From Octopus sinensis (Eukaryota): a DNA stretch of 64,000 nucleotides. The notes beneath the pieces are model-generated. The model did not search any database. It saw nothing but the letters and a program-made list of their open reading frames with translations, and had not been told where the DNA came from. Location of the stretch: positions 108,686,001 through 108,750,000 of the forward strand of contig NC_043000.1 of the NCBI RefSeq assembly GCF_006345805.1. The letters run 5' to 3'. Of the stretch, positions 8,971-60,670 are shown piece by piece. A program made the position numbers and the translations under genes. Numbering within the stretch: position 1 is the first letter of the stretch; each line of letters begins with the position of its first letter.

Positions 8971-9104
8971 ACACATATATATACGATGGGCTTCTTTCAG
9001 TCTCCCTCTACCAAATACATTCAAAAGGCTTCCCCAAGACACTTCCCCAAGGTTCCATGCTGTGGCACTGAACCCTGAACCATGTGGTTGGTAAGCAAGC
9101 TACT
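8722..9104 (-). mobile_element. Second SINE family with a tRNA-like head and internal (TA)n/(CA)n; representative copy
   Basis: Head ...ggttcagggttcagtgccacagc... and body gactgaaagaagcccatcg; related pieces recur near 3570, 12350, 17160, 22130, 24050, 28460, 32090, 33510, 35240, 43020, 50520, 53020 and 56950. Confidence 0.75.
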
Positions 9105-19825: not shown

Positions 19826-19931
19826 CTGTGGATTCCAAGACAGTCCTGTAGTGTGGTATTCTTTGACGTAAGATTGAAGCTCTTTCAAGGCATTAATCCA
19901 AGCTTTGGTCCAATCAACATGAGTTGCATCT
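19826..19931 (-). CDS. CAP1: CAP exon, 106 nt ([35 protein letters not shown])
   Basis: Acceptor tttacttgtag, donor gttagt, phase 2 to 0. Contains HVDW.K.W...L.ELQ.YVKE.HTTGL.W, the end of the helical folded domain. Confidence 0.96.
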
Positions 19932-22900
19932 CTACAAGTAAACCAAAATCATCATAGTTATCATCATCATAATCAACAACACCAACACCACCCCCACCAC
20001 CATCATCATCATCAATAAGGATATATTTAAGTCTAATGATAAGGTTGGTGCTAATGTACATAATGTAGTGAACCAACAATCAATTCTGGTAAAGAAAGAT
20101 AGAAGATAACATCTGTGATTATATTTAAACAACACCATCACACACACAGAATCTAATGTAAGATATAGTCTCCAAGACTTCTAAGCACATTGGACTTTTT
20201 ATCTGGCAGTGGTGGACGAGTAATTTAAGCGGATTTGACTCAGACATCATTGATGCTTGCAGATGTCTTTTTGTGTTTTAAGATAAGAGAGGAGACAGAA
20301 AGGAAGAGAGAGCAGATCCTTATCAGGCCCTTAATTAAAGACAAATCAATTAAAAAAGAACTTAAATGATTGAACTGCTTTATTGACACAGAAGGGTAAG
20401 AACTTTGTCTCGTGTATCACATGGTGGCACATGGGGCAAGTGTCTTCTACTCTAGCTCCAAGCTGATCAAAGCCTTGCAGGTGGATTTGGTAGATAGAAA
20501 CTGAAAAGAAGCCCCATTAAGTGTGTATATGTGAGCGAGTGCATGTGTGTGTCTATTACTGTCTCCTTGACTTGACATCATCTGATAATTGTAAAAGAGT
20601 GCCACCATCATGCAAATGATGTCCATTTGCAGACTTCCATGAAAACATGTCTGGTCATTGAGGGAAATATTACTTTGCTTGGAAACAGCTGAGGTTTGGT
20701 AACAGGATGGGCAGATAATCTATGCCCCAAAATTCCATCCAATCCAATGCAAGCATGGAAAGTAGCATGAAATGATGATGATTTCATGTATGATAATAAA
20801 AATAACTCGAGACTTACTTCTCTTTGAATTCTTTCAGAACACGGTTGGTGTAGAACAGTGCTGAATCAGACATTTCCTTGATGTAAGATACTGGAGTATT
20901 CTGCAATTAAAGTAATTAAGTTCATGAAACCTCAACGACACAAGGAAATAATTATTTCATTTTGATAAATTGCAGCCAATTTTTGTTAGACAGGAAGAGA
21001 ATGGTTTTTCCCTCTTCATATTCTAAATTTATTCAACATAAAATTACTATTTTACATTTAATTTGCTATCAGCTTGTTAGTATATATAACGAATGGTGGG
21101 TAATTGCTGTTCTGGAAAGAGAATTCCAACTGCAGCAGTTTTACTTCACATCTATTAATCATCATCATCATCTTTTAACATCTGTATTTCATGCTGGCAT
21201 GGGTTGGATGCATTGACAAGGATCCAATGAAACAAAGGATTGGACTGTGCTCTGCTGTCTGGTTTCTATGGGTGGTGGATGCCCTTCCTAATGCCAACCA
21301 CTTTACAGTGTGTGCTACATGCTTCTTCCGTGCTACTGGCACTACTTAGGTCACCATAAAGCTCACAAGTCAACCAGCCGAGAGGTGGAGGGTGCAGTGC
21401 CTGTATGTTAGATGCAGGGTAATAATAAAACTTCTTTCTACAATAAACACAAAGCCGGAAATTTGCAGGGGTTGGTGGTAAAGCGATTACAATGACCCCC
21501 ATAATTCACCTTTGGAAACATGGGTGTTTCATTCAACAACCTTAAACAACCCTTATTCAGGGACCTTTTGAACAGGATGGGCTACTTGATCTAAAGAAAA
21601 TTCTAACTGGACTCCCACCTGCAAGGTCCTGCACTGTTTATTTTGGTATCAGATCACCATGTTGCCACATATCACATTTGGTTATGATGCATGTGCCTGG
21701 TGTACCTTTAATAGATGGGTAGTCATGAAGGGAAACTGGGCTTCGTATATTTTACCCCAGTGTCACTTTCATGACATGCACTGCTTTCTCACTCAATAAT
21801 AATAATTAGTGCAGGGTCCATGAATAAGATACTTGATTCTAGCTGACTGAGGGATTGAACTCTAAATAGATGCCTTAAGTCCAGTAGGGTTCATCTCTAG
21901 GAATAGTTATCATCATTGTTTTAATGTTCATTTTTGCATGGATCAGAAGGAATTTATTGAGGCAGGTTTTCTACAGTTGGATCCCAATCCTATCGTCAAC
22001 CCTTATCTGTTTCCAAATAAGGTAATATTTCTCCATGAACAGACATGTTTTCACAGGATATTTGAAAATGAATGACTTCCATTTACAACTATCACATGAT
22101 GTCAATACGAGACACAAATACATATATGCACAATACAGTGGGCTTCTTTCAGTTTCCACCTACCAAATCCACTCACAAAGCTTTGGTCATCACAGGGCTA
22201 TCATAGAAGACACTTACTCAAGGTGCAACATGCTGAGACTGAGCCAAAAAGCATGTGGCTGGGAAGCATAGTTCTTAACAACATGGTTCTGCCTAGTATA
22301 AGTATTTCTTGGCTTGTAACCCTAATTTCAATTTCTCCCATGAGTCTAGAAAGGGCAATGAGAATTTAACTGAAAAAACTGGTGTGGAAAAAATGTTGTA
22401 CTAAGATTTAACAGTGAATTAGGGGATGCGACTTATACATGAGCAAATACAGCGTTTCTATAGTAACCCTATTGCAACAAAAACTGTATTTTAACAGAAA
22501 TAGAGAAACAGAATGATTAAAGTAATATCTTAAACATTACCCCAAGATCACAACTAAAAGTTGTAGAAACAGCATTAAAAATTACTCAAACAACAAATTA
22601 GGAAAGTTAAGATACCCTCAAAACTCTGCTTAAATTTCTGTGAAAATAAAGTACAATAAAAAATGGGAACTTACCAAAGTTACCCATCCAAGCGCTGGGA
22701 TTGATTCACTGATGGCTGATAAATGGTTAAAGTATGGATCTCTACGGTTTTTCTCACGCAATTCCTGAAAGAGACAAAACATAATTGGTAAACAAAATTA
22801 CTTGGAGATTTTTATATAACATTTCTGTTTTACTTATTTATATATACAAGTTTATATAGACACATACCCATATATATACAAGTTTATATAGACACATACC

Positions 22901-25900
22901 CATATACATACAAGTTTATATAGACACATACCCATATACAAGTTTATATAGACACATACCCATATATATACAAGTTTATATAGACACATACCCATATATA
23001 TACAAGTTTATATAGACACATACCCATATATATACAAGTTTATATAGACACATACCCATATATATATACAAGTTTATATAGACATACCCATATATATACA
23101 AGTTTATATAGACACATACCCATATATGCGCCTACCCCCATATACACACAATGATTCAATAATTTCCCAATTAACAGTGTGGCTTTTGCTTTGATTAGAT
23201 CTTCTAAAATAAAATAATACAATAGTTCCAATGCTAAAGTGTAGCACCCTTAGTTTGTCTTTAATTTATATTTTTAATATAATATTCTATTTTGAGATAA
23301 ATGATTAATTTTCTGCCTTAGATGTAGACCCGTATTCCCACACTTTTCTCCTTTGGTATGACAGGGAACAGGAAAGGAAAAAAAAAAAAAAAAATTAATG
23401 CCTCCAAATTCCAATGAAAAGTCAGTGGGTTAGCAGGAAGTTCTAACTGCTGTTGGCCATGGAATGGTTTCCCTAAGTAGTCAGGATTTAAGAGACAAAT
23501 AAATTATAAATAGGTTAAATGTGATAACTGTCTTCTAGATGTAGGTCAATGTGTCTACTTGGCCATGCCACAAGAAATTAACACTGCATCTCCTCACTAA
23601 CATTTAACCCTTTAGTGTTTAAACCGGCCCAAATATTCTAAAAGTTTTATATTCAAACTGGCTATATCTAGCCTCTCACACATAACCTACAATGTCATGC
23701 TAAAAATAAACAATCACATCACTGAAACCTCAAAGCTACAAGATAATGCATGATTAATTCAAAACAATTTGAGTGAAAAAGTATTACATTTAACAGAGTA
23801 ATCTGAACACTAAAGGGTTAATGTCCACTTTTTCTTGCTTGCATGGGTCAGACAGAATTTTGGGGGATGGATTTTCTATGGCTTGATGCCTTACCTATTG
23901 CTAACAAACACCCATTACCAAGCAAGGCAATATTTTCTCATAGCTAGACATTTTTCATGGAACACTTGAAATGATAGAACACCTATATGATTTGTTTACA
24001 ACCATAGAATGATGTCAAGACAAGGACACACAAACACACACATGCATACATATATGACAGGCTTCTTTCAGTTTCCATCTATCAAATCCACTCACACAGG
24101 CTTTGGTTGGCCTGGAACTATAGTAGAAAACACTTGCTGTACAGTGGGACTGAACTCAAAACTACACGGTCACGAAGCAAACTTCTTAACAACGCATCTG
24201 TGCCTACACCATGCCGGTGTGTGTGTGTCTATCGATATAACAGATGACAGAAGTTTCATGGTAATGAGTGAAGAAGAGGATGGTGGTACTATGGTGGATT
24301 ACTAGGTGGAGTTATTCGATGGGGAAGGTAGCATCCATGATTCTTCACAAGTTCTCCAAGACTAGGGGGTGGAGAAGGGATGAAGGTATCCTGAAACTGA
24401 AATCCTGAACCAAAAGTTTGCAACAGGGTGGACTTTGCTAAAGGAATCCAAGGCACCAAGTGATTAGGTTAAATCTTTACTTGAGTGAAGTATAATGTCA
24501 ATCACTTGGTTAACTTTATGGTGATTCATAACCACACCTCAAGCTATCTATGACCATGCCTGTGTCTTTAGTCATACCTAAAGTCTAAAAAAAAAAGAAC
24601 CAATTTTCACCCCAGCATATTCTCACTAACACAAAATGAATGGCATATGCCATGAAAGGCAGCGAACATAATAAAACCTGTCTCAGTAAAATCCAGATGA
24701 ACACATGAAGACATCTTACCTGAATGGCTTGCAGTTTAGAGCTTGTCGGATTCAAAAGGTGGTTCATTTGATCCTGAGAAAAAACAAACAAAAAGCAATA
24801 TTTAAACAGTCATGGAATAAATTCAGAAATGCTATTTTCACAGTTTTTAGCTGAATTTTTAGCAAAATAGTTTCAAATAATAAAGCAGAGCCCTAACTCA
24901 CTGGCAAGTATGAATTGAGAGCATCGATAGTGCTTTCACTGTTTTAGGTGTCTACAAAGTTAGGAACAAACATAATCTTGGTCATCCTGTTGTTCTTGAC
25001 TCAGCATGACACCAGGGATGTGATAACTGGAGCAAGAGAGAGGCAGAGCAGGAACGATTCAAGGCTCAGTTAAAGAAAAATCATTCTAGAGTGGTGGAGT
25101 GGAAGCTGAGCAGTATTCAATGCTGCTCTTTGTGTTCCGAGCTCAAGGCTCATACTTATTTTTCAGTAAACTGGAGCAATGCAAAATGAAATACCTTGCT
25201 CAAAGAATTTAACCAACGATGTAATGATCACAAGTCCAACATCCTAACCACTAGGCTGCATGTCTTTGCAGTACCAAATACATTGACAATGCATATTAAC
25301 TTCATCTTGTTTTAGGATAATTATTATCAGCCAGGGTAAACATCAAAGGAAACCTATGAACTACCCAGCTAGCTGGCTTTCTTCAGTAAGGGGCTGATCG
25401 TTTTCTAAATGAGACACTGTAATTTGCTGCAGGGGACCACAAGGCAACAGTTCGGAGAATTTTGTAACTGAACACCTCTTTTCATAAAATGGTGTTCTCT
25501 AAACAAGGGTCTTTTAGTAACTATTGATGGCACAACAGCCTGGTTTGGAAGCATCTACAGTTGTAGACAAGTTAGACATAAAGACAAGAAGTAATTAGCA
25601 ATCTTTTATTTCAGTAAACTGATTGTTTTATTTTTGATTTGTGTTGTTGTACTTGTTCCTTCTTTAAATATACAGAAATATTTCAATGAAAATTTATTAT
25701 TTGTAAAATAATGGCCAGTGTATAGGTGACCTATACAGAAATAAAGAAACAACTTCTTACATTTGCTGGCTTTTTGCTGCGAGATACTTGAACAAGGAAA
25801 CTTCGCTGAGCATTGAAAGCCTCCTGCACCATGGCGGCCTGGAAGAAGACAAAAAATTATATCAACACACAGGATACTTCATGCAGTGAATTTCCATTAA

Positions 25901-28900
25901 TAAATAAATCAACAACTATATTAGATTCAAGCCCTCTTGCACCTTACCATACATACATACATACATACATCATCATTTTATGTCCATTGTACAATGGTTT
26001 GAGTGGGGTGGCATGCTGTGCCAGGATCCAGCCTGATTTGGAATGGTTTTCTATGGCTGGATGCCCTCCCTAATGCCAACCACTCCAAGAGTGTAATGGG
26101 TGCTTTTATGTGCCACTGGCATGGGTGCCATTTGCATGACACTGGTATCTGCCACAACTGCAATTTTGCTCGGCTTGATGGGCCTTCTTTTCAAACACAA
26201 CAATGCCAAAGGTCTTGGTCATTGCTTTTGTGAGGCCCAACACTTGAATGGAGCTCAGCCATTTTGCCTCCATGAAGCCCAAAACTCGAAAGGAACTCGG
26301 TCACTTTGCCTCTGTCAGGCCTAATGGAAAAGATACAATGAAGATACATTTCAACAATGTGTCAAAGACAGCAGTTTCGTAGATAGAAGAGGAACCAAAC
26401 GTTAACAACTTATTCTGAATTAAATCAAGGCTTGGTCAATTTGGACTCCTACCGTTTCTCTGGATACATTCAGTTATGAAGTAATGCCCAACCTTTCAAA
26501 CTCATCATCTGCACATTTTTCACACTTTTCCAACTGAAGTGATATCATGGCCATATTCTTCATCGTATAACACTACCATATTGTAGTTTCCCTATTTCTT
26601 AATCTGTGCATGAGGGATCAATACCATCAAGAGGAAGTCAACAAGAGAATTATATAGTTAAAAAGAAAAAAGATTATTACCCTGCGTGCGTAAATGAAAG
26701 CAGGGCATTGTAGTCAATCGTCTTTGTTGTGTTTGAGAATCCAACTAGGAAGTTGGATTAAAGATGGTTGCTTCTGCTAGGAATCTATGGTGGAGGTGGC
26801 TATGGACTCTACCCCCAACAACCCTCTCAAGAACGGGGGGGGGGGCAGAGAAAAATAGACGAATGGATAAAATAAGGTAGTGCCCCAGTATGGCCTCGCT
26901 CAATCCAATGACTGAGTGAATGTTGATTCTTGTTTGCCAATACTTACTTGGATCTTCACATTGCCATTAATCTTGGAAGAGAGGGCAATAAATGTTGCCA
27001 CAGGTCCCTTGATAATGTCATCGTAAGCCACTACAAACGGTGAAAGTACTTCTGCAATAAAAAAGGAAAAACAAAAATTATTATTAATATAGAAAGGGCT
27101 GAAGGAGGACAGCTTCGACTTGAAATGGAAAGGGAAGATAGAGAGGAAAATAGTGCCTTCTAACAAACTTGTTGAGAGATGGGTGACAGTAGCAAGAATG
27201 GTCCAGATAAATGGGCCTGCTCTGAGTATGTGTGTCTATAGATTGAGAGAGGGTGATGAGGGAGAGGGTACTTGCCTTAGTGGTCAGAGTAAATGGGATT
27301 TGTGCAGCTTTCACAGGCAGCCCTTAGAGGTCTCCCACTTTTTGAGGAATTTTCTGGTTTGAATTTTTGTTTCTTTGTTTTTGTTATTTTACTGTTAATA
27401 GGGCTTCGTAGAGCCACATGCCATATCCTATTGTATCATCTTGTACAATCCTTGATCTGTTTTTAAGCCCTTATTAAAGAAATTATTATTATTATTACTG
27501 AAAGAATCAGAAGTGTGGTGGAGAAAATACTCTGTGGTATTTTCTTCAGTTGCTTTCTTTTACATTTAGAGTTCTAATTCTGTCAAGGTTGATCTTACTT
27601 GTCACCCTCTCAGAATCAATAAAATCAAGTACCAGCTATGAATTGGGGAGGGGGGGCGTCAATGTAACTGGCTACTATTCGCCCCGTGCCAAAAAGAAAT
27701 ACTGTGACCCTGGACCAATGCTAACAATCATCATTATTTTCTATGAATCTGACAAAGAAATCACAAGTGTAACAATGTAATGGACAAATTAAATAAAAGA
27801 GGATCAATGAGACGTGTGAAAGTGCTTTCATTGCAATTTCTGACTTTGTCAATGACATGCCTTCCTCCTCCTCTTCTCCGGGTCTGCAACGAAAGGACTT
27901 GGTCAAACTTAACAGATTGATTGATTAATCTAAGGGTTAATCAGAAGAGAAGAGTATCGATTGAAACTTTTGGAAAAACCATTGTAAGAGGTAAAACAAT
28001 ACAAGAAGAGAAACATTTAGAAGTGGAACCACTTGAAACTCTATTACAGACACTGTTGAAGTCCAGACCCAGAAGATGCAACTCTACTTATTATGATCAT
28101 CCTGACACTCCATATTTCATGGCTGGGTATACTTAAGACTATGAACAACATTTAGCTATAGAAACATCTGAGGAAAGGGGGTTGTGTATGTCTCATGGGA
28201 CCATGGGCCTGAAACCAATCCCAGACAAGGATTTCATGGAAGCCCAGCCATTGGCCATGGATGCAGGTTGTCCTTCTTCACAGCATCCCTGTTGTTTAAG
28301 AAGAAAGCAGAGACCAGTACTGATGCCGTTGCTATAGGAATGCAAAGAGCAACGTCACAGCAGGATATTAAGTTGGAACACCACGAGGCAGACAAACTGA
28401 TGGGTTCAAGACTCGAAATTTCATTTTCTGGGGGAAAAACAGCTTCTCCAACAAAAATAATCCCAGTTACAGCAGTGGACTTCAGCCATGCTGGAGCACT
28501 GCCTTGAAGGGTTTACGAGGATCGATAAGTCTGATACTTATTCTATCAGTTACTCTTGCCAAACCACTAAGTTATAGGGGATACAAACAAACCAAAACTA
28601 GTTGTCAGGCAGGGGTAGGGGAGACACAACAAAGACACACATAGGCTAGGATTCCACACAGTTTCTGTCAACCTTATTAACTCACAAAGCATTGATTGAT
28701 AGCAGAAGATACTTGCCCAAGGTGTTGTGCAGTGGGACTGAACCCAAAACTGGATGGTTACAAAGCAAGCAGAGTCGCGCCCACATTTATATAAACAGAG
28801 AGAAAAAGAAAAGGACCAAATCATAAAAGCAACATATTTTGAGGGTACTTCAGGATCATCAGCATCATTATCATCTGGAATTTCAGGACCGTTTCCTTTT

Positions 28901-39476: not shown

Positions 39477-39832
39477 CACACAAACATATACATGGTGGTT
39501 GTCTACCCCTTATGCAGAGTCTGACCACTTTAGATCTATCATGACGTCAGATGAGGCTTTTTAAACCCCACAAATGTTTTGAAAAGAGCCCAACATAAAC
39601 TGCATATCTGCTTTGGACCACCAAGAACTGCATTTAGGTTCTGGTCTTTATGGCTCTTAAAATGTCTTAGATTTGCAGACCTTATGGCATACACGACATA
39701 GAGAGACATTCACAGATAGATAGGCAGAGTAGTCTGGTGTCTGGCACGGGATTAGCTTATCTCATGAGCAGGTAGAAGCTCTTTAACTTTGGTTGGTAAT
39801 GTACCTAGGAGAAGGAAATCTCAAAAACATAT

Positions 39833-39894
<62 letters not shown>

Positions 39895-42800
39895 GGACAT
39901 GTTTGGGTTCCATGGCATACATGGAGGCTACAGTTTTGGTTCTCGCAATGTGAAGCTAAGTAAAAGCATGGTTACCCTTATATACAATTTCATCCCCTGT
40001 AACCCTCTCTATCTGAGTATCCCTAATCTTGTGGGCTCATAGGTACTGGTGCCACATGAAAAGCACGCATGCCAGTGCTGCTGCGTGAAAGCACCCAGTA
40101 CACACTGTACGAAGGGCATCCAGCTGTAGGGACCGAGAATGTAGTGGGTGCTTTTTATGTTATGTGTCACTGCCACAGGAGCCACTCAGGTGGCACTAGC
40201 ATCAACCATGTTAGGATGGTGCTTTTTACGTGCCATTGGCATGGGGAGCAAGTCATATACACACACACAAAAATTATTGAAACCACAACATTACATTTTA
40301 CCCAGTCTTTATCAAACCCACTCCGTTTGAGGATAAATTTGTTTAAATTATTTTTCTAGGCTTACTAATGTAAAGAATGAGGGTGGGGCAGGAGTTGTTG
40401 TTGATGAAAATGCCCTCTATTGTTTATTCCCTTCCCAACTAGAAACACTTGTGTCCACCGACCTTGTGGCAATGCATTGACATCACAACTTCCTTATATA
40501 TCCTGGGATTCATGACAATTTAAAAAAAAAAAGAGAACCAAATGTGTGTGTGTGTATAAGCATACATGTACATAAAGAAGTTGATTTACAAACACCTCTA
40601 TCTGTTTCTTTATTACCCACAAGGGGCTAAACATAGAGGGGGCAAACAAGGACAGACAAATGGATTAAGTTGATTACATCAACCCCAGTGCGTAACTGGT
40701 ACTTAATTTATCGAGGATGAAAGGCAAAGTCGACCTTGGCGGAATTTGAACTCAGAACGTAACAGCAGACGAAATACCACTAAGCATTTCGCCCAGTGTG
40801 CTAATGGTTCTGCCAGCTCGCCGCCTTTTTTACAAACACCTCTATCATTAACACAAACATAGATATCCCTACATACTTGCACATACACACACACATTATT
40901 CTTCTCGACACTTCCATACATACATATGCAGTTAACCACACACACACACACACACACAGACAGAATTGGACAACACAATAAATTGTGAATCTTGCAAAGA
41001 AGGCAAAATTTACATGAAAGTAGAATTTATGGAGCAGATGATGAAGGCCATGATGTTAAGTTGGTGATGGGAGATAGTGTAACACCTACCTACTTCTGCA
41101 TAATCGCTGTCCTCCTCCTCGTTTTCTGTTCCCGCATTTTGTTGCGAGATTTTATCAGTGGAGAGGTCATACTCGTGACTGACAGAAGTCCTGTTCTTGC
41201 TATTGTCATAGTAGGGGTCATCGTTGGAATGGTCCTTGATATTATCATAGTTGGGGTAATTGTTTACGTAGTGGGGGCTTTCCTGGTAGTTGTTGATAGT
41301 CTCATAGTAAATAGTCCCAGTGCTGTCGTTGCAATCTGATACACAAACAGCAGGACTTTTCCCTGTAATAACTCTACTGCCATCAGGACCACACTCACCA
41401 CCACCACCACCACCGTCCTGTGTCACAGCCACCAACGGCTTTTTGTGACTGTGACTAACACAGGCACCCATGTATATGTGACATGAAAACAAACTCAAAC
41501 TCTACCAAAAGTATCACCAAACTTCTCTGGCCCCTTACATCACAGTCCAGTACACTAAGCTCCTGATTAGTTGGTTTGTGTGATACTCAAGCAACACACA
41601 CACACACAAACAAACTAGTGTTGTTGCAGCTATAGACTGATAATCCTACTGTTTTTTTCTAGACCAGCCCCACTCCAGCCCCACTTGTGTAGTAAATGAG
41701 TTTGGGAACATAATCATTACCTTTAGGGCAACTGCACCTTCAATCAACCTCTTCCATTACTCCAACCAGCATTATTTAAATTGCTAGGACCCCTCAACAC
41801 CAACAACAACACTAACAAGGAGACACCCAGAAGTGGTGTGGGGGGTGGGGTATATTACCAAAAAGAAAGAAAGGAAAACACTTTCCCCACCACTGTCCCC
41901 ATCTCCATTCAATCAACAACAGATCACTCACCATTCCCAACAACAGCAGACAGCAACCACCTACCATCATCATCATCAACACCATTATTACTTATTACCA
42001 CCACCACCACACACAACATAATTCCTTTTCTCAACCTTCCCCACCCTCTCACCACTGCCACCATACAGACAACCTGTCAGTGTGTTATTGTCACCAAGAA
42101 CACCAGTGCCACCTCCAGCCAAATGTGACAACCACTAAAGCTTTCCCCAAAAAGATACTAAATACCAGGAAAAGCAGAAGTTGGTGTGTAGAGATGTGTG
42201 AATGAATAATGTCTTCTCCCCCTTGTTTATGGCACAGCTGGGGGGGGGGAGTTATAAGGGGGGGGGGTAGCTAGAGATGGATGGGGGCAAGGTACTTTAT
42301 TCCATGTCTTCTTGCCATTGAACCATCAAACTAGCAAAACTATTGTTTATTTGTGTGGTGATGGTCATGGTGTGTGTGTGTGGGGGGATGCCATAAGCCT
42401 GTCACTGCTGCCCAAGCAGGGTCAATGTGAAGATAAACACACACAGAGGTTTCAGTACAGTTTCTGTGTAGCAAACTTCACAGGTAAATCCAGAGTGGTC
42501 AATCCCAGGCTTTACTAGAAACTACTTATCCTATATGTGATGCAATGAAATTGAACCTGAAACCTTGTGGTTGGCAAGCAAACTTCTTAACCACACAGCC
42601 AAGCTTGTACCTTCTTCCCTATGACTGGCAGAGAAAGTGCACAAGTTACAAGTCACTACCAACTCTACTAGTGCTTCTACTACACCACCACCACTTACCA
42701 TGACCATCACCATTATAAGCAACAAATGTATTTATTTGTGAAGATGCCATTTTTACTTCACTTGACAATTATAAATTACATTTCACACCTGAATTATTCC

Positions 42801-45800
42801 ATTTCTGTCTGTCATTCTATTTCGTTGACTGTTATGGGAAGGAGGAGGTGCATGACTAGGAAGTAGAAAGAGACAGAAAGAGATGGAATAATTCAGGTGT
42901 GAAAGGTGATTTATAATTGTCAGGTGAAAAAAAATGCTAATACTCATCTTGCAGCAATCACACTATGTTGTGACAAGGAGACAGAACCTCCCCCCCCCAC
43001 ACACACACAGCAGGCTTCTTTGTGTTTCCATCTACCAAATCTACTCACAAGGTTTTGGTTGGCTCAAGGTGGCCATAGAAAACACTTGCCCAAGGTGCCA
43101 CACAAGGGGTCTGAACCTGAAACCATACGTTCGGGAAGAGTCGTGATTGCATTCAATATTGAAACTGTTCAGCTGGATTTGAACTTGGATATCATAAATC
43201 AGAACCTTTGTGTCATGTCAAGCAAACCATTTTCTTCTTGGATTGTATGCTAACAACTGCTGAGCAACACACACACACACACACACACACACAGTGCAAG
43301 CATCTTGTCAGGATGGGGAGGTGCTTGCAGAATGTGATGGTGGTGGAGGGCATGAAAACCAAGCAATTACATTACAGGAGTCATACATTGTATTACATAA
43401 ATTGCATCATATATACCAGCACATATTGTATTACATACATATATATTTCTTTACTACCCACAAGGGGCTAAACACAGAGGGGACAAACAAGGACAGACAA
43501 AGGGATTAAGTCGATTACATCAACCCCAGTGCGTAACTGGTACTTAATTTATCGACCCCGGAAGGACGAAAGGCAAAGTCGACCTCGGCGGAATTTGAAC
43601 TCGGAACGTAACGACAGACGAAATACGGCTACGCATTTCGCCCGGCATGCCAACGTTTCTGCCAGCTCGCCGCCATATTGTATTACATACATATAGTGCA
43701 GCATGTACCTGCATACGCTGTATTACTTAAATATATTGTGTTACACAGACAGTGAATAAATTTGACTGAACCCCACCTCACCACTCTTTGAAACAGAATA
43801 AGACAGTAAGAGAGAGAAAAAAAAACAGAATAATTGATAACTCACCTGTGGCAGGTTGATAATATACTGGCGATTGGTAATACGGATAGGAATAATTGTA
43901 TGGGGTATAGTAATAATTCATGTTAGGGTTGTTTAGATACATACTTATAGGTTGATGTATAAAAACAAAAACAAAAATACTATTCAGATTGTTGTGTAAG
44001 TGTATGCGTGTGTTGTGGAGCTTTATTTGGCACCAAACACTACTATATAGAAATAAATGTGATGGATACGAAGAGTGTAATTGGGCAGAAAATTTGCAAC
44101 ACAATTAAGTAAGGTGGATAATTAAAACTTGCTGGTCTGTAATTACATAACTGCTATTATAAAAATAAATTTCCTACTTTAAGAAACAAGATGAACTGAA
44201 ATCTAAACTTCAGTGAGTCTGAATGATAGATCACAGACAAAACGGGTCAAATGACTTCAACAGAATAATTTATGAAATAAATAAAAGAAAGGAGGAAAGA
44301 AACAAAGAAAATTAAAACAGACAAAAAAAAAACCTGAATAAAAATGATTAAGCAAGATAATGTGAGGAGTGAAGGTGTATGGGTATTTTATAAGTCACAG
44401 GGAGACTGACATCAGTGTGATGGTGTCATTGTAACACAGCTATGATGATAAATTGATTAACTTGAATTAGAAGATACAAGAGGCACCACCCATCAGATTA
44501 TGACAAATTGGCTGGCTGGCTGGCTGGTTTGTTGGTTGGCTGTCTGGTTGGTGTTCTGGTAATCCTACATCACAAGTTGTCCCCCACCCCACCACAACTA
44601 CCCACCTCACACCTGTAACATTTAATCTAATCTCTATTAACATTTAATGCAAAACAGTTGTACTTCCATTTACTTTAGTTTCATCCTCTTCACTGTGGCC
44701 CTCACCCCCAACAACTGCTGGAAACTGATTTCACAGCAATCTGTGTTCTAAAAGTCTGATAAACTTTTTCTTAATCTTTTTGTTGTTGTTTTAACTCACA
44801 TCACAGGGGGACATTGGGACGTAACTGGAAATTTCTTCAGCTTCAAGTTACCATATATTCAACTAAGTCACCTCAGGGTTCACAAAGATTAAAGCTACCA
44901 ATCTGTTCATATTCAGAGATATGAAGGATAAACGTCAGAATGAATCAAAGAAAAAGACATGGGGCAAAAGAGAAGATTCTCCATGGACACTGTTAAGTCT
45001 ACAAGTCTGGATTTGATTCCAGATCTGCAAACAAGCAAAGCACAAGCCTTTATACATGGTAGCTTAACATATAGCAACCAAATCTTCCCTGCTCAAATCA
45101 TACACTAATCGTAAATTACAAAAAACATATAATTATATAATAATATACAGAAAATTCAATATTTCCAATCGTAACCACTATAAAAATATTAACATTTTTT
45201 TTTGTTTTTGCTTTTAACATTTTTTTTGGTCCTTATTATATAGTCACATTATGTTGTGATTCCATTCCCATGTGATTTTATTCCCAGGTATGGCTTTGTA
45301 GTAAGTAATTTGCTTACCAATAACATGGTTCTAGGTTCAGTGAATAAAGGGTCCAATTTAGGTCGTATATCAGTGTGTGTATATAAAAAATTTTTTTCGT
45401 AATGTGGCAGTGGATGCTCAGATAGTGTTACCACTAGAATAAGAATAGCCTGGGCAAAGTTTAGAAAGCTTCTACCCCTACTGGTGACAAAAGGTCTCTT
45501 GCTCACAGTGAAAGGTAGATTGTATGATGCATGTGTGCAAACTGCCATGCTTCATGGCAGTGAAACATGGGCCGTGACTGTGGAGGACATGCGTAGGCTC
45601 AAAAGAAATGAAGCTAGCATGATCCGCTGGATGTGTAATGTCAGTGTCCATGCACAACAGAGTGTAAGCGTCCTGAGAGAAATGTTGGACATAAGAAGCA
45701 TCGGGTGTGGCATGCAGGAGAGATGTTTGCGTTGGTATGGTCATGCACTATGGATGGATGAGGAGAGATGTGTGAAGAAGTGCCACTCCCAAACAGTTGA

Positions 45801-46844
45801 AGGAATCCAGGGTAGAAGTAGACCCAGGAAGACATGGGATGAGGTGGTCAAACATGACCTTCGAACATTGGGCCTCACGGAGGCAATGACGAAAGACTGA
45901 GACCTTTGGAGATATGCTGTGACTGTGAAGACCTGACAAATTAAATGAGTTCATGGCTCGCAGGACGGCCTGCTGTGCTTACCTTGGATCGTAGGGCAAC
46001 CCGCTGTGCTTGAGGAGACCTATTGAGTCAAGTACATCAACATCAAAATAAAAATTAAATGGAAATTGTAGTTGTGATATCTGTACCAGTGGCACGTAAA
46101 AAGCACCAACCAATTGTGGCCGCTGCCAGTCTCCCCTGGCACCTGTGCCGGTGGCACGTAAAAAGCACCCACTACATTCACGGAGTGGTTGGCATTAGGA
46201 AGGGCATCCAGCTGTAGAAACACTGCCAGATCAGACTGGAGCCTGGTGCAGCCTCCTGGCTTCCCAGACACCGGTCGAACCGTCCAACCCATGCTAGCAT
46301 GGAAAACGGACGTTAAATGATGATGATGATATATAGATAGATAGATGAGGTAATACATATATGTATATATGTGTGAGTGCTTTTGTCCCCCATTACTTAA
46401 CTGGTTTTAGTTTGTTTACTTTCCTGTAACTTAACGGTTTGGCAAAAGAGACCAACAAAATAAGCACCAGGTAAAACACTGAGGGCCATTTGTTTCATAA
46501 AAATGCTTCAATGAGAGAGATTCAAGCAAAAGTGGAGAAAATACATAAAACTTTGGTGAAATGGAATTTCAAATGACCTAAAATAAATAAATCTGAGACA
46601 TTCCACCCCTAACTCCATCCCCGACACCCTTAATTTCATGCTTGCTGCCACAGCACTAATTTTACAACAGATAAAATAACACAGGCTGCACTCAAGACAC
46701 TCCATAGACACCAACAATTACAGGTGCAATGTCTATGCTACACCACCACCACCACCATGAACATCAACAGTAATTTCATACTAACTAAATGTACATCACT
46801 TTCCAGTTGTGGGATGGAATGAGTTAAGAGTATGTGTGTGTGTG

Positions 46845-59300: not shown

Positions 59301-60670
59301 TTGCACGACTTAGAAAATGGTAAGACAATTCCACTATTCCAACAAATTAATAGTTTAGATACTTTTAATCCTGAATAGAGTATGCAGCAACTGAACATAA
59401 AATTTCTTAATTTAACCTAAAGCATGAAACTCAACAAGACATACGACTGGGTTAGTAGATTGTAGTAGATAATAGGCTTTTATGGGGTTATGTCCAGTCA
59501 CGGCATGAAACGTTTCAAATTATGCCAGATAAGAAATTTACTTGGTGATACACAAAATGAGCATAAAACTATAGACCTCATGTTTAATCAGAATATCCAG
59601 GTGCCGTTTTCAGCTAGTGTGATAGAGGGTAATGGTTGGGGGAAGTTGTAGGGAATAATTAGAGAAGGGGCACACACTATGGGTCAGGGAGAAGAGGGAG
59701 CATACTGTAGGATTGAGGGAAGTGGGTGTACATTGTATGGATGAGAGAAGGGGTTGCATAGTGGAGGGCCAAAAGAAAAGGAGGCACACACTGCAGGGCT
59801 GACCTAAGGTGTTGAAACCACGGCAGAGGCCCTGTTAGAAGTTGGAGTGCAACCATATATAGAAGTGAAATAGCTGAACTGATAAGGCATAAATCTACAA
59901 GTTTTTATGTCTTGCAGGTGTTCTGTTGAATATTTGGACCGAAAACTTATTTCTGTAATACTTAAGTTTACTTAGCTGTTAGAAAGAGATGTGGGAACTT
60001 CAGTGAATCTTAGCTGGGAAAAGTTCTTTGAGGTCAACTGGAAGCACTTGATCTTTTCCTAATAATAAAGAAAGGAGGTGGGGGGATAAAAAGAGAAATT
60101 TAATTTCTTACCTTCAGAGTTGCCTGCATTAACTAACTTTCCGGAAGTGTTGGCAATAGTCTCAAGCCGTGTGGATACCCGTTCCAGGCTCACCACCGCC
60201 GTCTCAAGACGCTCAATTGATTTTATCATTTGCTCAGCTGACATTTCGCCAGAATTGAGTCGAGCTCTTTCTTCAGCAGCAATAGCAAGAGCGTTGGATA
60301 GCTCACTGGCAATACGTTTTTCTCTTTTTTGTGATGCTTTAATAAGTTCACTTGCAAACGGTAGAGAGGAAACTGGTTGTTCACTGCTGGGCTTTTTCAC
60401 AATGTCCTGTTTAAATTCTTTAGCCTTTGCTTCTGAGGTAGAAGTATTTTCTTTAGAAGATGCAACTGGATCAGGTGCAGTCTCTTTTTTGATGTCTGTT
60501 GTTTCTACGCTGGCTCGTTTTGTTTGAAGGTCAAGTTCTACTTTCTCAACAATTGGTGGCTCAACTCCGTTTCCTGACTTGTAAATTGGATTTTCAGAAT
60601 TCTTGTTGTCTGGTGTTACTTGCAAAATCTTCTTCGATTTAGATTTCCTACAACCAGTACAACAAAACAT
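19826..60670 (-). CDS. CAP1: Adenylyl cyclase-associated protein (CAP/Srv2 family), multi-exon, 3'-partial in this window
   Basis: The spliced exons translate without a stop: ...[216 protein letters not shown]. The motifs RLE, FNHLSAxSESIxALGWV, FYTNRVLK and HTTGLxW are diagnostic of the CAP N-terminal domain. All junctions are GT-AG with matching phases. CAP1 is a family label; the vertebrate CAP1/CAP2 distinction cannot be made here. Confidence 0.96.
20818..20900 (-). CDS. CAP1: CAP exon, 83 nt ([27 protein letters not shown])
   Basis: Acceptor tactttaattgcag, donor gtaagt, phase 0 to 2. Contains the signature KEM.D...FYTNRVLKE. Confidence 0.96.
21495..21809 (+). repeat. Interspersed repeat ending in a short (TAA)n tail, probably a LINE 3' UTR
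   Basis: Ends ttttaccccagtgtcactttcatgacatgcactgctttctcactcaataataataat; family assignment is from recall only. Confidence 0.4.
22675..22764 (-). CDS. CAP1: CAP exon, 90 nt ([30 protein letters not shown])
   Basis: Acceptor tgtctctttcag, donor gtaagt, phase 0-0. Contains the signature REKNR..[17 protein letters not shown]. Confidence 0.96.
22841..23126. repeat. Minisatellite, about 32-nt unit (caagtttatatagacacatacccatatatata) x9
   Basis: Nine copies of caagtttatataga; unit length varies only in the (TA)n and ca parts. Confidence 0.95.
23608..23817. mobile_element. piggyBac-like MITE (210 bp) with TTAA TSD
   Basis: TTAA|CCCTTTAGTGTTTA ... TGAACACTAAAGGG|TTAA; TIRs match at 13 of 14 positions. 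Confidence 0.85.
24720..24773 (-). CDS. CAP1: CAP exon, 54 nt ([18 protein letters not shown])
   Basis: Acceptor ttgttttttctcag, donor gtaaga, phase 0-0. Matches the LLxPxS helix of CAP. Confidence 0.9.
25761..25838 (-). CDS. CAP1: CAP exon, 78 nt ([26 protein letters not shown])
   Basis: Acceptor ttgtcttcttccag, donor gtaaga, phase 0-0. CAP-like AFxAQRxFL..S..KKP pattern. Confidence 0.93.
26948..27051 (-). CDS. CAP1: CAP exon, 104 nt ([35 protein letters not shown])
   Basis: Acceptor ttttttattgcag, donor gtaagt, phase 1 to 0. Matches the first helices of the CAP helical folded domain. Confidence 0.93.
29620..30770 (-). mobile_element. Degenerate L1/Tx1-like LINE fragment (RT C-terminus and zinc-binding region)
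   Basis: Pieces read across frames: [60 protein letters not shown]...C.RC..HALFQCP. Boundaries approximate. Confidence 0.65.
31104..31453 (+). mobile_element. Severely 5'-truncated R4/Dong-type element between (TAA)n arrays
   Basis: Encodes [35 protein letters not shown], then a short UTR and (TAA)n at 31424-31453. Preceded by (TAA)n at 31075-31103. Confidence 0.75.
34875..35043. mobile_element. hAT-like MITE
   Basis: Ends cagcaattcttcacc / ggctgagaacattg; 8-bp flanks atttaaac / ctttagac match at 6 of 8. Confidence 0.45.
36200..36450 (+). mobile_element. Penelope-like element ORF fragment (region after the RT)
   Basis: [47 protein letters not shown] resembles the TNIG..F..L..KHFP..HK..KIFN...VK.SYS...N....I.AHN segment of Penelope-like ORFs (recalled pattern). 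Confidence 0.6.
38965..39490. repeat. Complex (TA)/(CA)/(TACA) microsatellite field with an embedded unit of about 30 nt x3
   Basis: Seen directly; it produces the spurious YIYI/CVCI ORFs in the track. Confidence 0.95.
40603..40828 (-). mobile_element. tRNA-derived SINE with an 18-bp TSD
   Basis: TSD tttacaaacacctctatc at 40585-40602 and 40829-40846. Confidence 0.9.
41090..41471 (-). CDS. CAP1: Candidate alternative CAP first exon, 127 aa, starting [11 protein letters not shown] with a Tyr/acidic tail
   Basis: Inside the stop-free, non-repetitive ORF 41010..41498. Starts MGxCxS..KK. Ends at donor GTAG|GTAGGT in phase 1, in frame with exon 27051. An internal phase-1 acceptor-like site is present at 41335. 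Confidence 0.65.
43444..43673 (-). mobile_element. tRNA-derived SINE with an approximately 22-bp TSD
   Basis: catattgtattacatacatata at 43422-43443 and 43674-43695. Confidence 0.9.
43846..43942 (-). CDS. CAP1: Candidate alternative CAP first exon, Tyr-rich 32-aa leader ([32 protein letters not shown])
   Basis: ATG-initiated open frame ending in a perfect donor ACAG|GTGAGT in phase 1, so in frame with exon 27051. 11 of 32 residues are Tyr and the segment is not a microsatellite. No transcript evidence. Confidence 0.6.
45399..46330 (+). mobile_element. RTE-clade LINE 3' fragment, same family as 47871-50015, opposite orientation
   Basis: ORF 45484..45900 aligns by eye with the C-terminus of the 544-aa ORF ([20 protein letters not shown]...[15 protein letters not shown]). 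It has a matching 3' UTR and a (GAT)n tail. Confidence 0.9.
47120..47300 (+). mobile_element. Short element between (TA)n arrays, Penelope terminal-repeat-like
   Basis: About 180 nt bounded on both sides by long (TA)n. Contains ctgtggaagagcgtaggctcgaaa, a hammerhead-like core. Confidence 0.5.
47871..50015 (-). mobile_element. RTE-clade LINE, 5'-truncated, with 3' UTR and (GAT)n tail
   Basis: Contains the 544-aa RT ORF followed by about 470 nt of 3' UTR ending ...atgctagcatgaaaagtggacgttaaacaatgatgatgat on the minus strand. Clade inferred from the C-terminal GSETW / RWYG / GRGRPRKTW motifs. Confidence 0.93.
48344..49978 (-). CDS. LINE reverse transcriptase ORF (no endonuclease domain in the retained part)
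   Basis: Motifs [47 protein letters not shown] and FRYLG; a C4HC3 cluster follows the RT core. Confidence 0.95.
   Translation of the reverse strand: MVVKAIRSMKTGKAPGPSGITAEMLKISGSVGYSLVTRIVNQVIHEGVIPNDWCSSIIVNCYNGKGDALDTSNYRGIKLLDQVMKVTERVIAQLIRERVNLDEMQFSFVPGKSTTDAIFLVRQLQEKYLAKDKPLYLAFVDLEKAFDRVTRSLIWWSMRKLGIDEWLVRAVRVMYRDAVSKVRVGNEYSEEFQVEVGVHQGSVLSPFLFIIVLQAITEEFKTGCPWELLYADDLALITESLSELEEKFLTWKQGLESKGLRAKTKVLISRKVDKSQTPSGRWPCSICRKGVGRNSIRCTKCKLWTHKRCSNVQGRLTRKIVFVCGRCSGAINTENAQRPSSATFQGEKLEIVDSFRYLGDQVSSGGGCAESVTAGVQTAWAKLRELLPLLVTKGLSLRVKGRLYDTCIRTAMLHGSETWAVTAEDMRKLARNEASMLRWMCNVSVHTRQSVSALREKLDLRSIRCGVQERRVRWYGQVVRMDEDSCGKKCHTLAVEGTCGRGRPRKTWDEVVKHDHRSLGLTEEMTSDRDLWKYAVREKTRQDK
50335..50490 (+). 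mobile_element. Left-end fragment of the same piggyBac-like MITE family
   Basis: TTAA|CCCTTTAGT start and internal similarity to 23608-23817 (aaactggc, tacaatgt, cacatca, gataatgca); no right TIR seen. Confidence 0.55.
58330..58652 (+). mobile_element. Non-autonomous element sharing the RTE 3' UTR and (GAT)n tail; representative copy
   Basis: gagtggttggcgttaggaagggcatccagctgtagaaac...cccatgctagcat...gttaaatgatgatgatg matches the 3' UTR of the RTE copies; many similar copies occur (e.g. near 9130, 21160, 25970, 53550, 53790, 54350, 57900). Confidence 0.8.
60112..60670 (-). CDS. CAP1: CAP distal first coding exon (long ATG 60670; conventional in-frame ATG 60244; RLE motif)
   Basis: Lies within ORF 60059..60682. 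Contains [19 protein letters not shown]. Ends at donor GAAG|GTAAGA in phase 1, which matches the phase-1 acceptor at 27051. There is no AG between the upstream T-tract and ATG 60670. Confidence 0.9.

What the first reader, a model, noticed from the sequence alone, without database searches (positions are those of the whole stretch)
41090..41471. Hidden exon starting [11 protein letters not shown] with a cluster of phosphotyrosine-like motifs
Seen: a 127-codon non-repetitive open frame. Its start fits the N-myristoylation consensus (Met-Gly, Ser at position 6) with a nearby Cys4 and a KK pair, as in dually acylated proteins. The last 82 residues hold 10 Tyr in contexts such as IYYETI, HYVNN, NYDNI, PYYDNS, EYDL and [10 protein letters not shown]. 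Established: acidic residues before Tyr and YxN/YxxI/YxxL/YxxV patterns are typical of tyrosine-kinase substrates and SH2 ligands. Inference: a membrane-anchored, tyrosine-phosphorylated CAP isoform lacking the RLE motif.
Basis: partly seen in the sequence, partly recalled or inferred. Interest (0 to 1): 0.75.

Follow-up and report, generated by a model that had tools for sequence, protein, structure and literature searches.

The report
Conserved alternative first exon of octopus CAP
Inside the first intron of an octopus cyclase-associated protein (CAP) gene lies a protein-coding exon, conserved in a second octopod, that would give CAP a lipid-anchor-type start and a tyrosine-rich docking-like tail in place of its usual coiled coil. 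Whether it is transcribed and joined to CAP could not be tested here.

Summary
The open frame is real. It lies on the minus strand, 41471→41090, as 127 codons plus one base, and ends at a good splice donor (TAG|GTAGGT).

It sits in the 33-kb first intron of a CAP/Srv2 gene. It ends in phase 1 with a G, exactly like the upstream RLE exon, so it reads in frame into CAP exon 27051-26948.

A related octopod (Logan contigs L001-L003) keeps the frame:
- dN/dS is 0.27.
- All four indels inside the exon are multiples of three, against 4 of 14 in the flanks.
- The antisense ORF is broken.
- M-G-x-C-V-S, all 10 Tyr, four YxN motifs and the donor are conserved.
- Constraint is concentrated on residues 1-6 and 35-80.

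The segment has no homologue outside octopods, matches no Pfam domain (beyond a weak CAP_N hit in the appended exon 2) and is predicted to be disordered.

No transcript data were reachable, so splicing to CAP, acylation and phosphorylation remain inferences.

Precedents exist: insect CAP isoforms without the RLE motif, palmitoylated Toxoplasma longCAP, and FRS2α (myristoyl-Gly2, palmitoyl-Cys4/5, Grb2 sites).

Verdict: probably a genuine lineage-specific alternative first exon, a new variant of a known kind.

The parts
41090..41471 (-). Candidate alternative first coding exon: ATG at 41471-41469, then 127 codons plus a G (phase-1 end).
   Evidence: The frame is conserved open in L001/L002, with dN/dS 0.27 and in-frame indels only.
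41454..41471 (-). Codons 1-6, MGACVS: an N-myristoylation-type Gly2/Ser6 with Cys4 (dual-acylation type).
   Evidence: The pattern is met in both species. pN is 0.07 against pS 0.82.
41232..41369 (-). Residues 35-80, the most constrained island: [13 protein letters not shown]...[24 protein letters not shown], holding six Tyr, three YxN motifs and YETI.
   Evidence: pN is 0.045 against pS 0.338. Alignment.
41091..41231 (-). Residues 81-127, an acidic tail with PYYDNS, EYDL and DSDYAEV. Constraint is moderate.
   Evidence: pN is 0.164 against pS 0.457. All Tyr are conserved.
41083..41089 (-). Splice donor G|GTAGGTG (GT at 41089-41088), identical in the relative.
   Evidence: After about 30 nt the alignment acquires 1-nt and 13-nt indels, so the coding signal stops here.
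41455..41484 (-). Overlapping out-of-frame uORF of nine codons (ATGTCACATATACATGGGTGCCTGTGTTAG). Its start and stop are conserved in L001.
   Evidence: Read.
41547..41596 (-). Most conserved upstream non-coding block (92% identity). It is a candidate 5'UTR or core-promoter element.
26948..27051 (-). CAP exon 2, the first exon of the helical folded domain. Its acceptor is ttattgcag|AAGTACTT with phase-1 entry, and it is the proposed splice partner.
60112..60670 (-). Canonical long first coding exon of CAP: [14 protein letters not shown]...RLE coiled coil...NSE+G, with donor G|GTAAGA and a phase-1 end.
19826..25838 (-). Further CAP helical-folded-domain exons: about 25838-25761, 24773-24720, 22764-22675, 20900-20818 and 19931-19826. 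The C-terminal half of the gene lies outside the window.
   Evidence: tblastn with O. bimaculoides XP_014791006.1. Junctions.

Best explanation
The segment is a lineage-restricted (octopod) alternative first coding exon of the CAP/Srv2 gene. It would be transcribed from a start site inside intron 1 and spliced from its donor at 41089 to the acceptor of CAP exon 2 at 27051.

The resulting isoform would lose two things: the MFCC-type N-terminal extension and the RLE coiled coil, which is the oligomerisation module. In their place it would carry a 127-residue, acidic, disordered segment.

The segment's first six residues, M-G-A-C-V-S, form an SH4/FRS2-like site. Gly2 would be N-myristoylated and Cys4 reversibly palmitoylated, tethering CAP's actin and cofilin-binding domains to membranes. 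Its conserved Tyr cluster (four YxN motifs, plus YETI and YAEV) would act, once phosphorylated, as docking sites for SH2 adaptors of the Grb2/Drk type.

Shown here:
- The open frame, its purifying selection and where that selection is concentrated.
- Conservation of the motifs and of the donor.
- Phase compatibility with CAP exon 2.
- Absence of a fold or a transmembrane segment.

Inferred:
- Transcription and the splice partner.
- Both lipid modifications.
- Phosphorylation and SH2 binding.
- The functional consequence, namely a membrane-tethered, less oligomeric CAP.
For: Coding signal:
- dN/dS is 0.27 against L001.
- Amino-acid changes number 33, against 43±3 expected if the same substitutions were placed at random (P≈0.001).
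- Indels in the exon are 4 of 4 multiples of three, against 4 of 14 in the flanks. By my arithmetic, Fisher's one-sided P is 0.023.
- The antisense ORF is broken in the relative, while the sense frame is open in both species.
- Coding-type conservation ends at the donor.

Where the constraint lies:
- Residues 1-6 have pN 0.07 against pS 0.82.
- The Tyr island has pN 0.045 against pS 0.34.
- The linker, residues 7-34, is neutral.
- All 10 Tyr, Gly2, Cys4, Ser6 and four YxN motifs are conserved.

Gene context:
- The exon lies in CAP intron 1, on the same strand as CAP.
- It ends in phase 1 with a G, as the RLE exon does, giving an open junction DYAEV-E-VLSPF.
- Its donor, TAG|GTAGGT, is comparable with the true CAP donors.
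- An in-frame TAG lies 11 codons upstream, and the only plausible upstream acceptor AG is polymorphic in the relative. Met1 is therefore the N-terminus.

Nature of the segment:
- No Pfam domain within the exon (the only hit, a weak CAP_N match, falls in the appended exon 2), no hydrophobic segment, and mean pLDDT 38.

Precedents:
- Many RefSeq insect CAP isoforms start at MSVQAFED..., without the RLE motif.
- Toxoplasma longCAP is targeted through Cys6/Cys8, which are putative palmitoylation sites (PMC6785269).
- FRS2α uses Gly2 myristate, Cys4/5 palmitate and pTyr sites for Grb2 and Shp2 (10.64898/2025.12.11.693497).
Against: - No RNA evidence of any kind, and no database protein that joins the exon to CAP. 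Those collections hold almost no octopus CAP, so this absence is weak evidence.
- Only two species could be compared.
- Nucleotide identity of the exon (83%) is no higher than that of the alignable flanks (84-85%).
- dN (0.14) is close to flank divergence, so much of the segment evolves fast.
- The start codon has T at -3 and is preceded by a conserved out-of-frame uATG.
- K11 is not conserved, and the acidic context of the Tyr residues is compositional.
- The only octopus CAP model seen, O. bimaculoides XP_014791006.1, uses the RLE exon.
- No homologue exists outside octopods among 1.84 billion representatives.
Confidence: 0.55

Rival explanations
1. The exon belongs to a separate small gene nested in the CAP intron. 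Either it is a mono-exonic 153-162-aa read-through protein (MG...AEVGRCYTI...), or it is the first exon of a gene whose other exons lie elsewhere in the intron. Such a gene would encode a free lipid-anchored, Tyr-rich adaptor that is not fused to CAP.
For: - The read-through ORF terminates within about 25 codons in both species, and its first 11 codons (GRCYTI.H.QL) are similar.
- Gene callers reported it as a stand-alone ORF.
- Nothing ties the donor to CAP exon 2 except phase and position.
Against: - After those roughly 30 nt the two species differ by 1-nt and 13-nt indels, and their tails are unrelated.
- A consensus donor sits exactly where the coding constraint ends.
- A simple scan found no obviously coding phase-1-compatible exon between 41089 and 27052 (a weak test).
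- Alternative first exons at this CAP junction are common in other animals.
Confidence: 0.22
2. The ORF is not translated. It is a chance open frame in conserved non-coding DNA, such as an intronic enhancer, a promoter or a lncRNA exon. Its apparent motifs come from an A/T-rich, Tyr/Asn/Asp-coding composition.
For: - The flanks are as conserved as the ORF at the nucleotide level.
- There are only two species and no expression data.
- The start context is weak and a uATG precedes it.
- Motif matches of this kind are common in low-complexity sequence.
Against: - The open frame is maintained across 68 substitutions and 4 indels, all in frame.
- Replacement changes are in deficit (P≈0.001), and third-position changes are in excess (19, 18 and 31 at positions 1, 2 and 3).
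- The antisense frame has decayed.
- Synonymous changes occur inside the MGxCVS codons while the residues are kept.
Confidence: 0.1
3. The exon is coding but serves mainly as a regulatory cassette. It could be a unit controlled by the overlapping uORF, or one whose inclusion after the RLE exon creates a premature stop. On this view it produces little stable protein.
For: - The overlapping uORF is conserved.
- Entering the region from the phase-1 RLE exon through upstream AGs runs into stops (my reading).
Against: A poison exon would not show protein-level constraint focused on an acylation motif and a Tyr cluster.
Confidence: 0.08

Closest known systems
CAP/Srv2 N-terminal isoforms made by alternative first exons (e.g. 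insect RefSeq isoforms starting MSVQAFED...)
   Same: The same gene family and the same junction, just before the helical folded domain. The RLE coiled coil is skipped.
   Different: The insect exons add only 1-3 residues. This one adds a conserved 127-residue segment with an acylation-type start and a Tyr cluster. Its usage is unverified.
Toxoplasma gondii longCAP/shortCAP (PMC6785269)
   Same: A CAP isoform with an N-terminal extension is localised through lipidation-type cysteines, while another isoform is cytosolic.
   Different: Toxoplasma uses alternative translation starts rather than alternative exons, and palmitoyl-type Cys6/Cys8 without Gly2. It has no Tyr cluster, and apicomplexan CAP lacks the N-terminal half altogether.
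FRS2α/SNT docking proteins
   Same: An MG-x-C start with myristoyl-Gly2 and palmitoyl-Cys4(/5), and multiple pTyr sites that bind Grb2 (YxN type) and Shp2. From memory, the FRS2 motifs HTYVNT and YENI resemble HYVNN and YDNI here.
   Different: No PTB domain and no detectable sequence homology. Here the anchor and motifs would be fused to an actin regulator.
SH4 domains of Src-family kinases and yeast Vac8 (from my own knowledge)
   Same: Gly2 myristoylation plus nearby Cys palmitoylation, followed by a disordered 'unique' region.
   Different: The Cys is at position 4 only, the basic patch is only partly conserved, and no kinase or armadillo domain follows.
Palmitoylated transmembrane adaptors LAT, NTAL and PAG (from my own knowledge)
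   Same: Membrane-tethered, disordered, with multiple YxN or YxxV SH2-docking motifs.
   Different: Those proteins are transmembrane. This segment has no hydrophobic stretch.

Membership tests
CAP/Srv2 (cyclase-associated protein) gene product | Helical folded domain (Pfam CAP_N, PF21938) encoded downstream on the same strand | tested here: met
   Exons at 27051-19826 align at 85-100% to O. bimaculoides CAP. Exon 2 gives a weak CAP_N hit.
CAP/Srv2 (cyclase-associated protein) gene product | Physical joining of this exon to the CAP exons in mRNA | not testable with these tools
   Only phase and frame compatibility were shown. No octopus transcripts are in the reachable collections.
CAP/Srv2 (cyclase-associated protein) gene product | N-terminal RLE coiled coil | tested here: not met
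   It is absent from the 127-aa segment and present only in the exon at 60112-60670. Many annotated CAP isoforms also lack it, so its absence does not exclude membership.
CAP/Srv2 (cyclase-associated protein) gene product | C-terminal WH2 and CARP domains | not testable with these tools
   They are not in the window: tblastn finds nothing beyond residue ~390 of P0002.
N-myristoylated proteins | Met1-Gly2 with a permissive residue 3, small residue 6 (Ser) and no Pro at 7 | tested here: met
   The PROSITE-type pattern is matched in the window and in the orthologue. The residues are kept despite three synonymous changes.
N-myristoylated proteins | Actual myristate attachment by NMT | not testable with these tools
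   This needs metabolic labelling or mass spectrometry.
Dual-acylated SH4/FRS2-type anchors | Cys within a few residues of Gly2 | tested here: met
   Cys4 is invariant in all four sequences. FRS2α Cys4 is palmitoylated.
Dual-acylated SH4/FRS2-type anchors | An adjacent basic patch as a second signal | tested here: inconclusive
   HKK in the window against PKT in the relative; only K10 is conserved.
FRS2/SNT family | N-terminal PTB domain | tested here: not met
   No Pfam hit within the 127-aa exon; the only hit, a weak CAP_N match, falls in the appended exon 2. Exhaustive phmmer gives no FRS2-like hit.
Phosphotyrosine docking segments (SH2 ligands) | Conserved Tyr in SH2-type contexts (YxN, Yxx[ILV]) | tested here: met
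   10 of 10 Tyr, four YxN and three Yxx[ILV] motifs are conserved. YxN is enriched (P 0.008-0.03).
Phosphotyrosine docking segments (SH2 ligands) | Tyr phosphorylation and SH2 binding | not testable with these tools
   This needs phosphoproteomics or binding assays.

The most novel reading that the evidence does not exclude
Octopods have evolved a CAP isoform that is itself a membrane-anchored phosphotyrosine docking scaffold. An FRS2-like module (myristoyl-Gly2, palmitoyl-Cys4 and multiple Grb2-type YxN sites) would be fused directly to the cofilin/actin-recycling machinery. Tyrosine-kinase signals at the membrane would then recruit adaptors to, and locally control, an actin-turnover enzyme that has lost its coiled-coil oligomerisation module. 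Together with the MFCC-type long isoform, the gene would encode two different lipid-anchor N-termini.
Probability: 0.25. Interest if true: 0.7.

Novelty: new variant of a known kind. Interest (0 to 1): 0.5.

Why it matters
CAP is a core, conserved actin-turnover factor. Its N-terminal coiled coil drives the oligomerisation thought to be needed for efficient cofilin-assisted filament disassembly.

An isoform that swaps this module for a lipid anchor and an SH2-docking region would be a direct, genetically encoded link between membrane tyrosine-kinase signalling and actin recycling. It would also be an example of lineage-specific exon birth creating a new signalling interface in cephalopods.

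The idea is directly testable by RT-PCR, G2A and C4S mutants, and phosphoproteomics. If the exon proves not to be joined to CAP, it still defines a previously unrecognised small acylated Tyr-rich protein.

Tried and rejected
1. The + strand reading of the given coordinates is full of stops. The feature is on the minus strand.
2. The antisense 115-aa ORF (40992-41339, +) is broken in the relative and does not fit the substitution pattern. Rejected.
3. A transposon or repeat origin was rejected. The exon is unique in the window and only a (CA)n repeat in the upstream flank (about 41595-41618) finds other matches.
4. Structured RNA was rejected. Rfam gives only sub-threshold miRNA-like hits on simple palindromic repeats outside the exon.
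5. A known protein domain was not found. Pfam gives nothing in the 127 aa and AlphaFold gives no fold.
6. Searches for more orthologues or a spliced protein returned only P0001 and its two near-identical variants. These were two k-mer searches, one profile search and one exhaustive phmmer search.
7. The O. bimaculoides CAP locus and the window's own ORF are not on record.
8. An exact splice-junction scan of the metagenome collection found no hit. The control with CAP exon 2 was also negative, so the result is uninformative.
9. The SRA run accessions could not be tied to a species or paper. The contigs break at SINEs, so they say nothing about transcription.
10. An internal-exon model, with an upstream acceptor, is disfavoured. 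The candidate AG is polymorphic in the relative (CAG against CGG), and entry from the RLE exon's phase gives stops.
A simple in-phase exon scan found nothing convincing.
Full report
**Observation.** The coordinates 41090-41471 hold no open frame on the + strand. On the minus strand they read [127 protein letters not shown], followed by one extra G. The next bases are GTAGGT, so the frame ends at a consensus-like donor, TAG|GTAGGT, with the GT at 41089-41088. An in-frame TAG lies 11 codons upstream of the ATG, so Met1 is the first possible start.

**Chance.**
- The start matches the PROSITE-type N-myristoylation pattern.
- An ATG-to-stop ORF of this read-through length (153 aa) is expected 0.11 times per 64 kb under a first-order Markov model.
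- YxN motifs are enriched against shuffles of the same composition: 4 against about 1 (P 0.008-0.03).
- Yxx[ILVM] motifs are marginal.
- 'Acidic residue before Tyr' is not enriched at all.

**Context.** The window is from an octopod genome, with abundant SINEs and (CA)n/(TA)n repeats. Its CAP exons are 85-100% identical to Octopus bimaculoides XP_014791006.1 but not the same, so it is a different species.

The minus strand carries a cyclase-associated protein (CAP/Srv2) gene:
- A long first coding exon at 60670-60112 ([14 protein letters not shown] ... [20 protein letters not shown] ... NSE+G, donor G|GTAAGA).
- Exon 2 at 27051-26948 (acceptor ttattgcag|AAGTACTT, encoding (E)[34 protein letters not shown], the start of the CAP_N helical folded domain).
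- Five further helical-folded-domain exons, down to 19826.
- The C-terminal half lies outside the window.

The candidate exon lies in the 33-kb intron between the first two exons. Both upstream exons end in phase 1 with a G. Either one therefore completes the codon G+AA=Glu and reads on into exon 2.

**Is it coding?** The only relatives in 5.8 billion clustered proteins and 1.84 billion exhaustively scanned representatives are three near-identical 153-aa ORFs (P0001, P0005, P0006). They come from Logan assemblies of runs SRR11869391, SRR11869384 and SRR11869385. These are genomic-type contigs that read through the donor and break at SINEs at both ends. Two of the three contigs (L001, L002) were aligned and run collinear with the window over about 1.1 and 1.4 kb at about 76% identity.

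- Within the exon, 68 substitutions give 33 amino-acid differences. Random placement of the same substitutions gives 43±3.1 (P≈0.001).
- Nei-Gojobori dN/dS is 0.27, and differences by codon position are 19, 18 and 31.
- All four indels in the exon are multiples of three (6, 3, 6, 3), against 4 of 14 in the flanks.
- The sense frame is open in both species, whereas the antisense 115-aa ORF is interrupted in the relative.
- About 30 nt beyond the donor, 1-nt and 13-nt indels appear and the read-through tails become unrelated.
- One caveat: aligned flank columns are as similar (84-85%) as the exon (83%). The evidence is therefore the pattern of change, not the amount.

**Where the constraint lies.**
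- Codons 1-6 (MG[A/T]CVS) have pN 0.07 against pS 0.82. Three synonymous changes occur while the residues are kept.
- Residues 7-34, the Gly-rich linker, are neutral (pN 0.235, pS 0.25).
- Residues 35-80 ([13 protein letters not shown]...[24 protein letters not shown]) have pN 0.045 against pS 0.34.
- Residues 81-127 are intermediate.
- Conserved features are Gly2, Cys4, Ser6, all ten Tyr, four YxN motifs, three Yxx[ILV] motifs and the donor. K11 of the 'KK pair' is not conserved.
- The segment is very hydrophilic, with net charge -14 and no transmembrane-like stretch.
- It matches no Pfam family; the only hit is a weak CAP_N match in the appended exon 2. AlphaFold gives mean pLDDT 38.

It therefore behaves as a disordered region carrying short linear motifs.

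**First exon or internal exon?** The only plausible acceptor AG between the upstream stop and the ATG is polymorphic in the relative (CAG in L001, CGG in L002). Entering from the RLE exon's phase would hit stops. Conserved non-coding blocks lie upstream, for example 41596-41547 at 92%. This fits a separate transcription start, but no promoter can be demonstrated.

Two features argue for weak or regulated translation. The start has T at -3. A conserved out-of-frame uATG 13 nt upstream opens a nine-codon uORF that overlaps the start.

**Is it joined to CAP?** This could not be tested. None of the protein collections returned an octopus CAP other than the O. bimaculoides RLE-form model. The metagenome collection lacks even CAP exon 2. 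The absence of a spliced product is therefore uninformative. The window's own ORF and the O. bimaculoides locus are not on record.

The indirect support is as follows:
- Same strand, same phase, an open junction and a good donor.
- No convincing alternative in-phase exon in between (a weak test).
- Precedent: of 120 CAP relatives inspected, 74 lacked the two-RLE pattern searched for; many of these, mainly insect ones including RefSeq 'isoform X2/X3' models, start directly at the helical folded domain (MSVQAFED...) without any RLE motif, while others keep an RLE...KLE-type coiled coil.

**Mechanism proposed.** An internal start site would produce an mRNA whose first exon encodes the MGxCVS start and a docking-like tail, spliced to CAP exon 2.

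By established rules for NMT substrates (my own knowledge), Gly2 with Ser6 is a good substrate after Met removal. Cys4 next to a myristoyl-Gly is a palmitoylation site in FRS2α (Cys4/5; 10.64898/2025.12.11.693497).

Lacking the coiled coil, the isoform should be less oligomeric and membrane-tethered. The conserved YxN, YETI and YAEV motifs are candidate SH2 ligands (pYxN for Grb2/Drk, from my own knowledge).

A lipid-targeted CAP isoform is documented in Toxoplasma, where longCAP localises through Cys6/8 (PMC6785269).

My estimates are:
- Real coding exon: about 0.85.
- Joined to CAP: about 0.6.
- Myristoylated, if translated from Met1: about 0.7.
- Functional pTyr docking: about 0.35.

**Comparison and novelty.**
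- It is not a member of the FRS2 family: it has no PTB domain and no sequence homology.
- It would be a CAP isoform only if the splice is confirmed.
- It resembles FRS2 and SH4 anchors in mechanism.
- It resembles the insect RLE-less isoforms in gene architecture.
- It has no homologue outside octopods.

I rate it a new variant of a known kind. It is interesting but unverified, and I could not check whether current octopus RefSeq models already contain it.

**Side observations** are listed separately. The main one is that the canonical long exon starts with a GAP-43-like Cys cluster (MFCCTGC), and gastropod CAPs start MFCCC or MLCCC.

Noticed in passing
window 60629-60670 (-); proteins P0004, P0008, P0020: The canonical long CAP exon starts [14 protein letters not shown], a GAP-43-like Cys cluster plus basic patch (palmitoylation type). 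Gastropod CAPs start MFCCCAEE (Candidula), MFCCCPQD (Bulinus) and MLCCCPKEK (Aplysia), each before a long low-complexity extension and the RLE coiled coil. Short mollusc forms start right at the RLE motif. This suggests a conserved lipid-anchored long CAP isoform in molluscs. The O. bimaculoides model reads MFSCFSFGKIFRKSKSKK instead.
   Followed up: partly
window 41455-41484 (-): A nine-codon out-of-frame uORF (MSHIHGCLC*) overlaps the candidate start codon. Its start and stop are conserved in the related octopod (MSHIHGHLC*).
   Followed up: partly
window ~41259-41301 (-): A run of about 43 nt inside the Tyr cluster (GAGACTATCAACAACTACCAGGAAAGCCCCCACTACGTAAACA) is identical between the two species, synonymous sites included. 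This could be chance, an exonic splicing or RNA-level constraint, or an RNA-editing-related constraint. It was not tested.
   Followed up: no
window 48344-49978 (-) and 45484-45900 (+): A 544-aa ORF of a non-LTR-type retroelement, with RVT_1 (E 2e-26) and a weak PHD-like zinc finger, lies in the same CAP intron. A truncated copy of its C-terminal region, in the opposite orientation, lies at 45484-45900.
   Followed up: partly
window 40780-40850, and ORFs at 9008-9355, 46020-46358, 47905-48213, 58263-58610: Multiple copies of an octopus SINE-like repeat are present, seen as recurring translated motifs (...[20 protein letters not shown]...) and GGCGAGCTGGCAGAA...GCTTAG. The related-species contigs end exactly at such repeats.
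   Followed up: no
window 39825-39909 and 42780-42905: Sub-threshold Rfam miRNA-like hits (mir-297, mir-1277, mir-3914) occur on both strands of simple palindromic repeats. They are far below gathering scores and are most likely repeat artefacts.
   Followed up: partly
window 41472-42400: The region upstream of the candidate exon has a CpG observed/expected ratio of 0.0. The exon itself has 0.49 and the RLE exon 0.63. The meaning is unclear: it could reflect methylation-driven depletion or a compositional quirk.
   Followed up: no
window 60240-60250 (-), within the RLE exon: An internal Met (…[17 protein letters not shown]) aligns with the start of a short CAP form (P0007, species unknown: MSSEQLLKAVDRLE). 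Long and short RLE forms could therefore arise from alternative starts within this exon, as in Toxoplasma.
   Followed up: no
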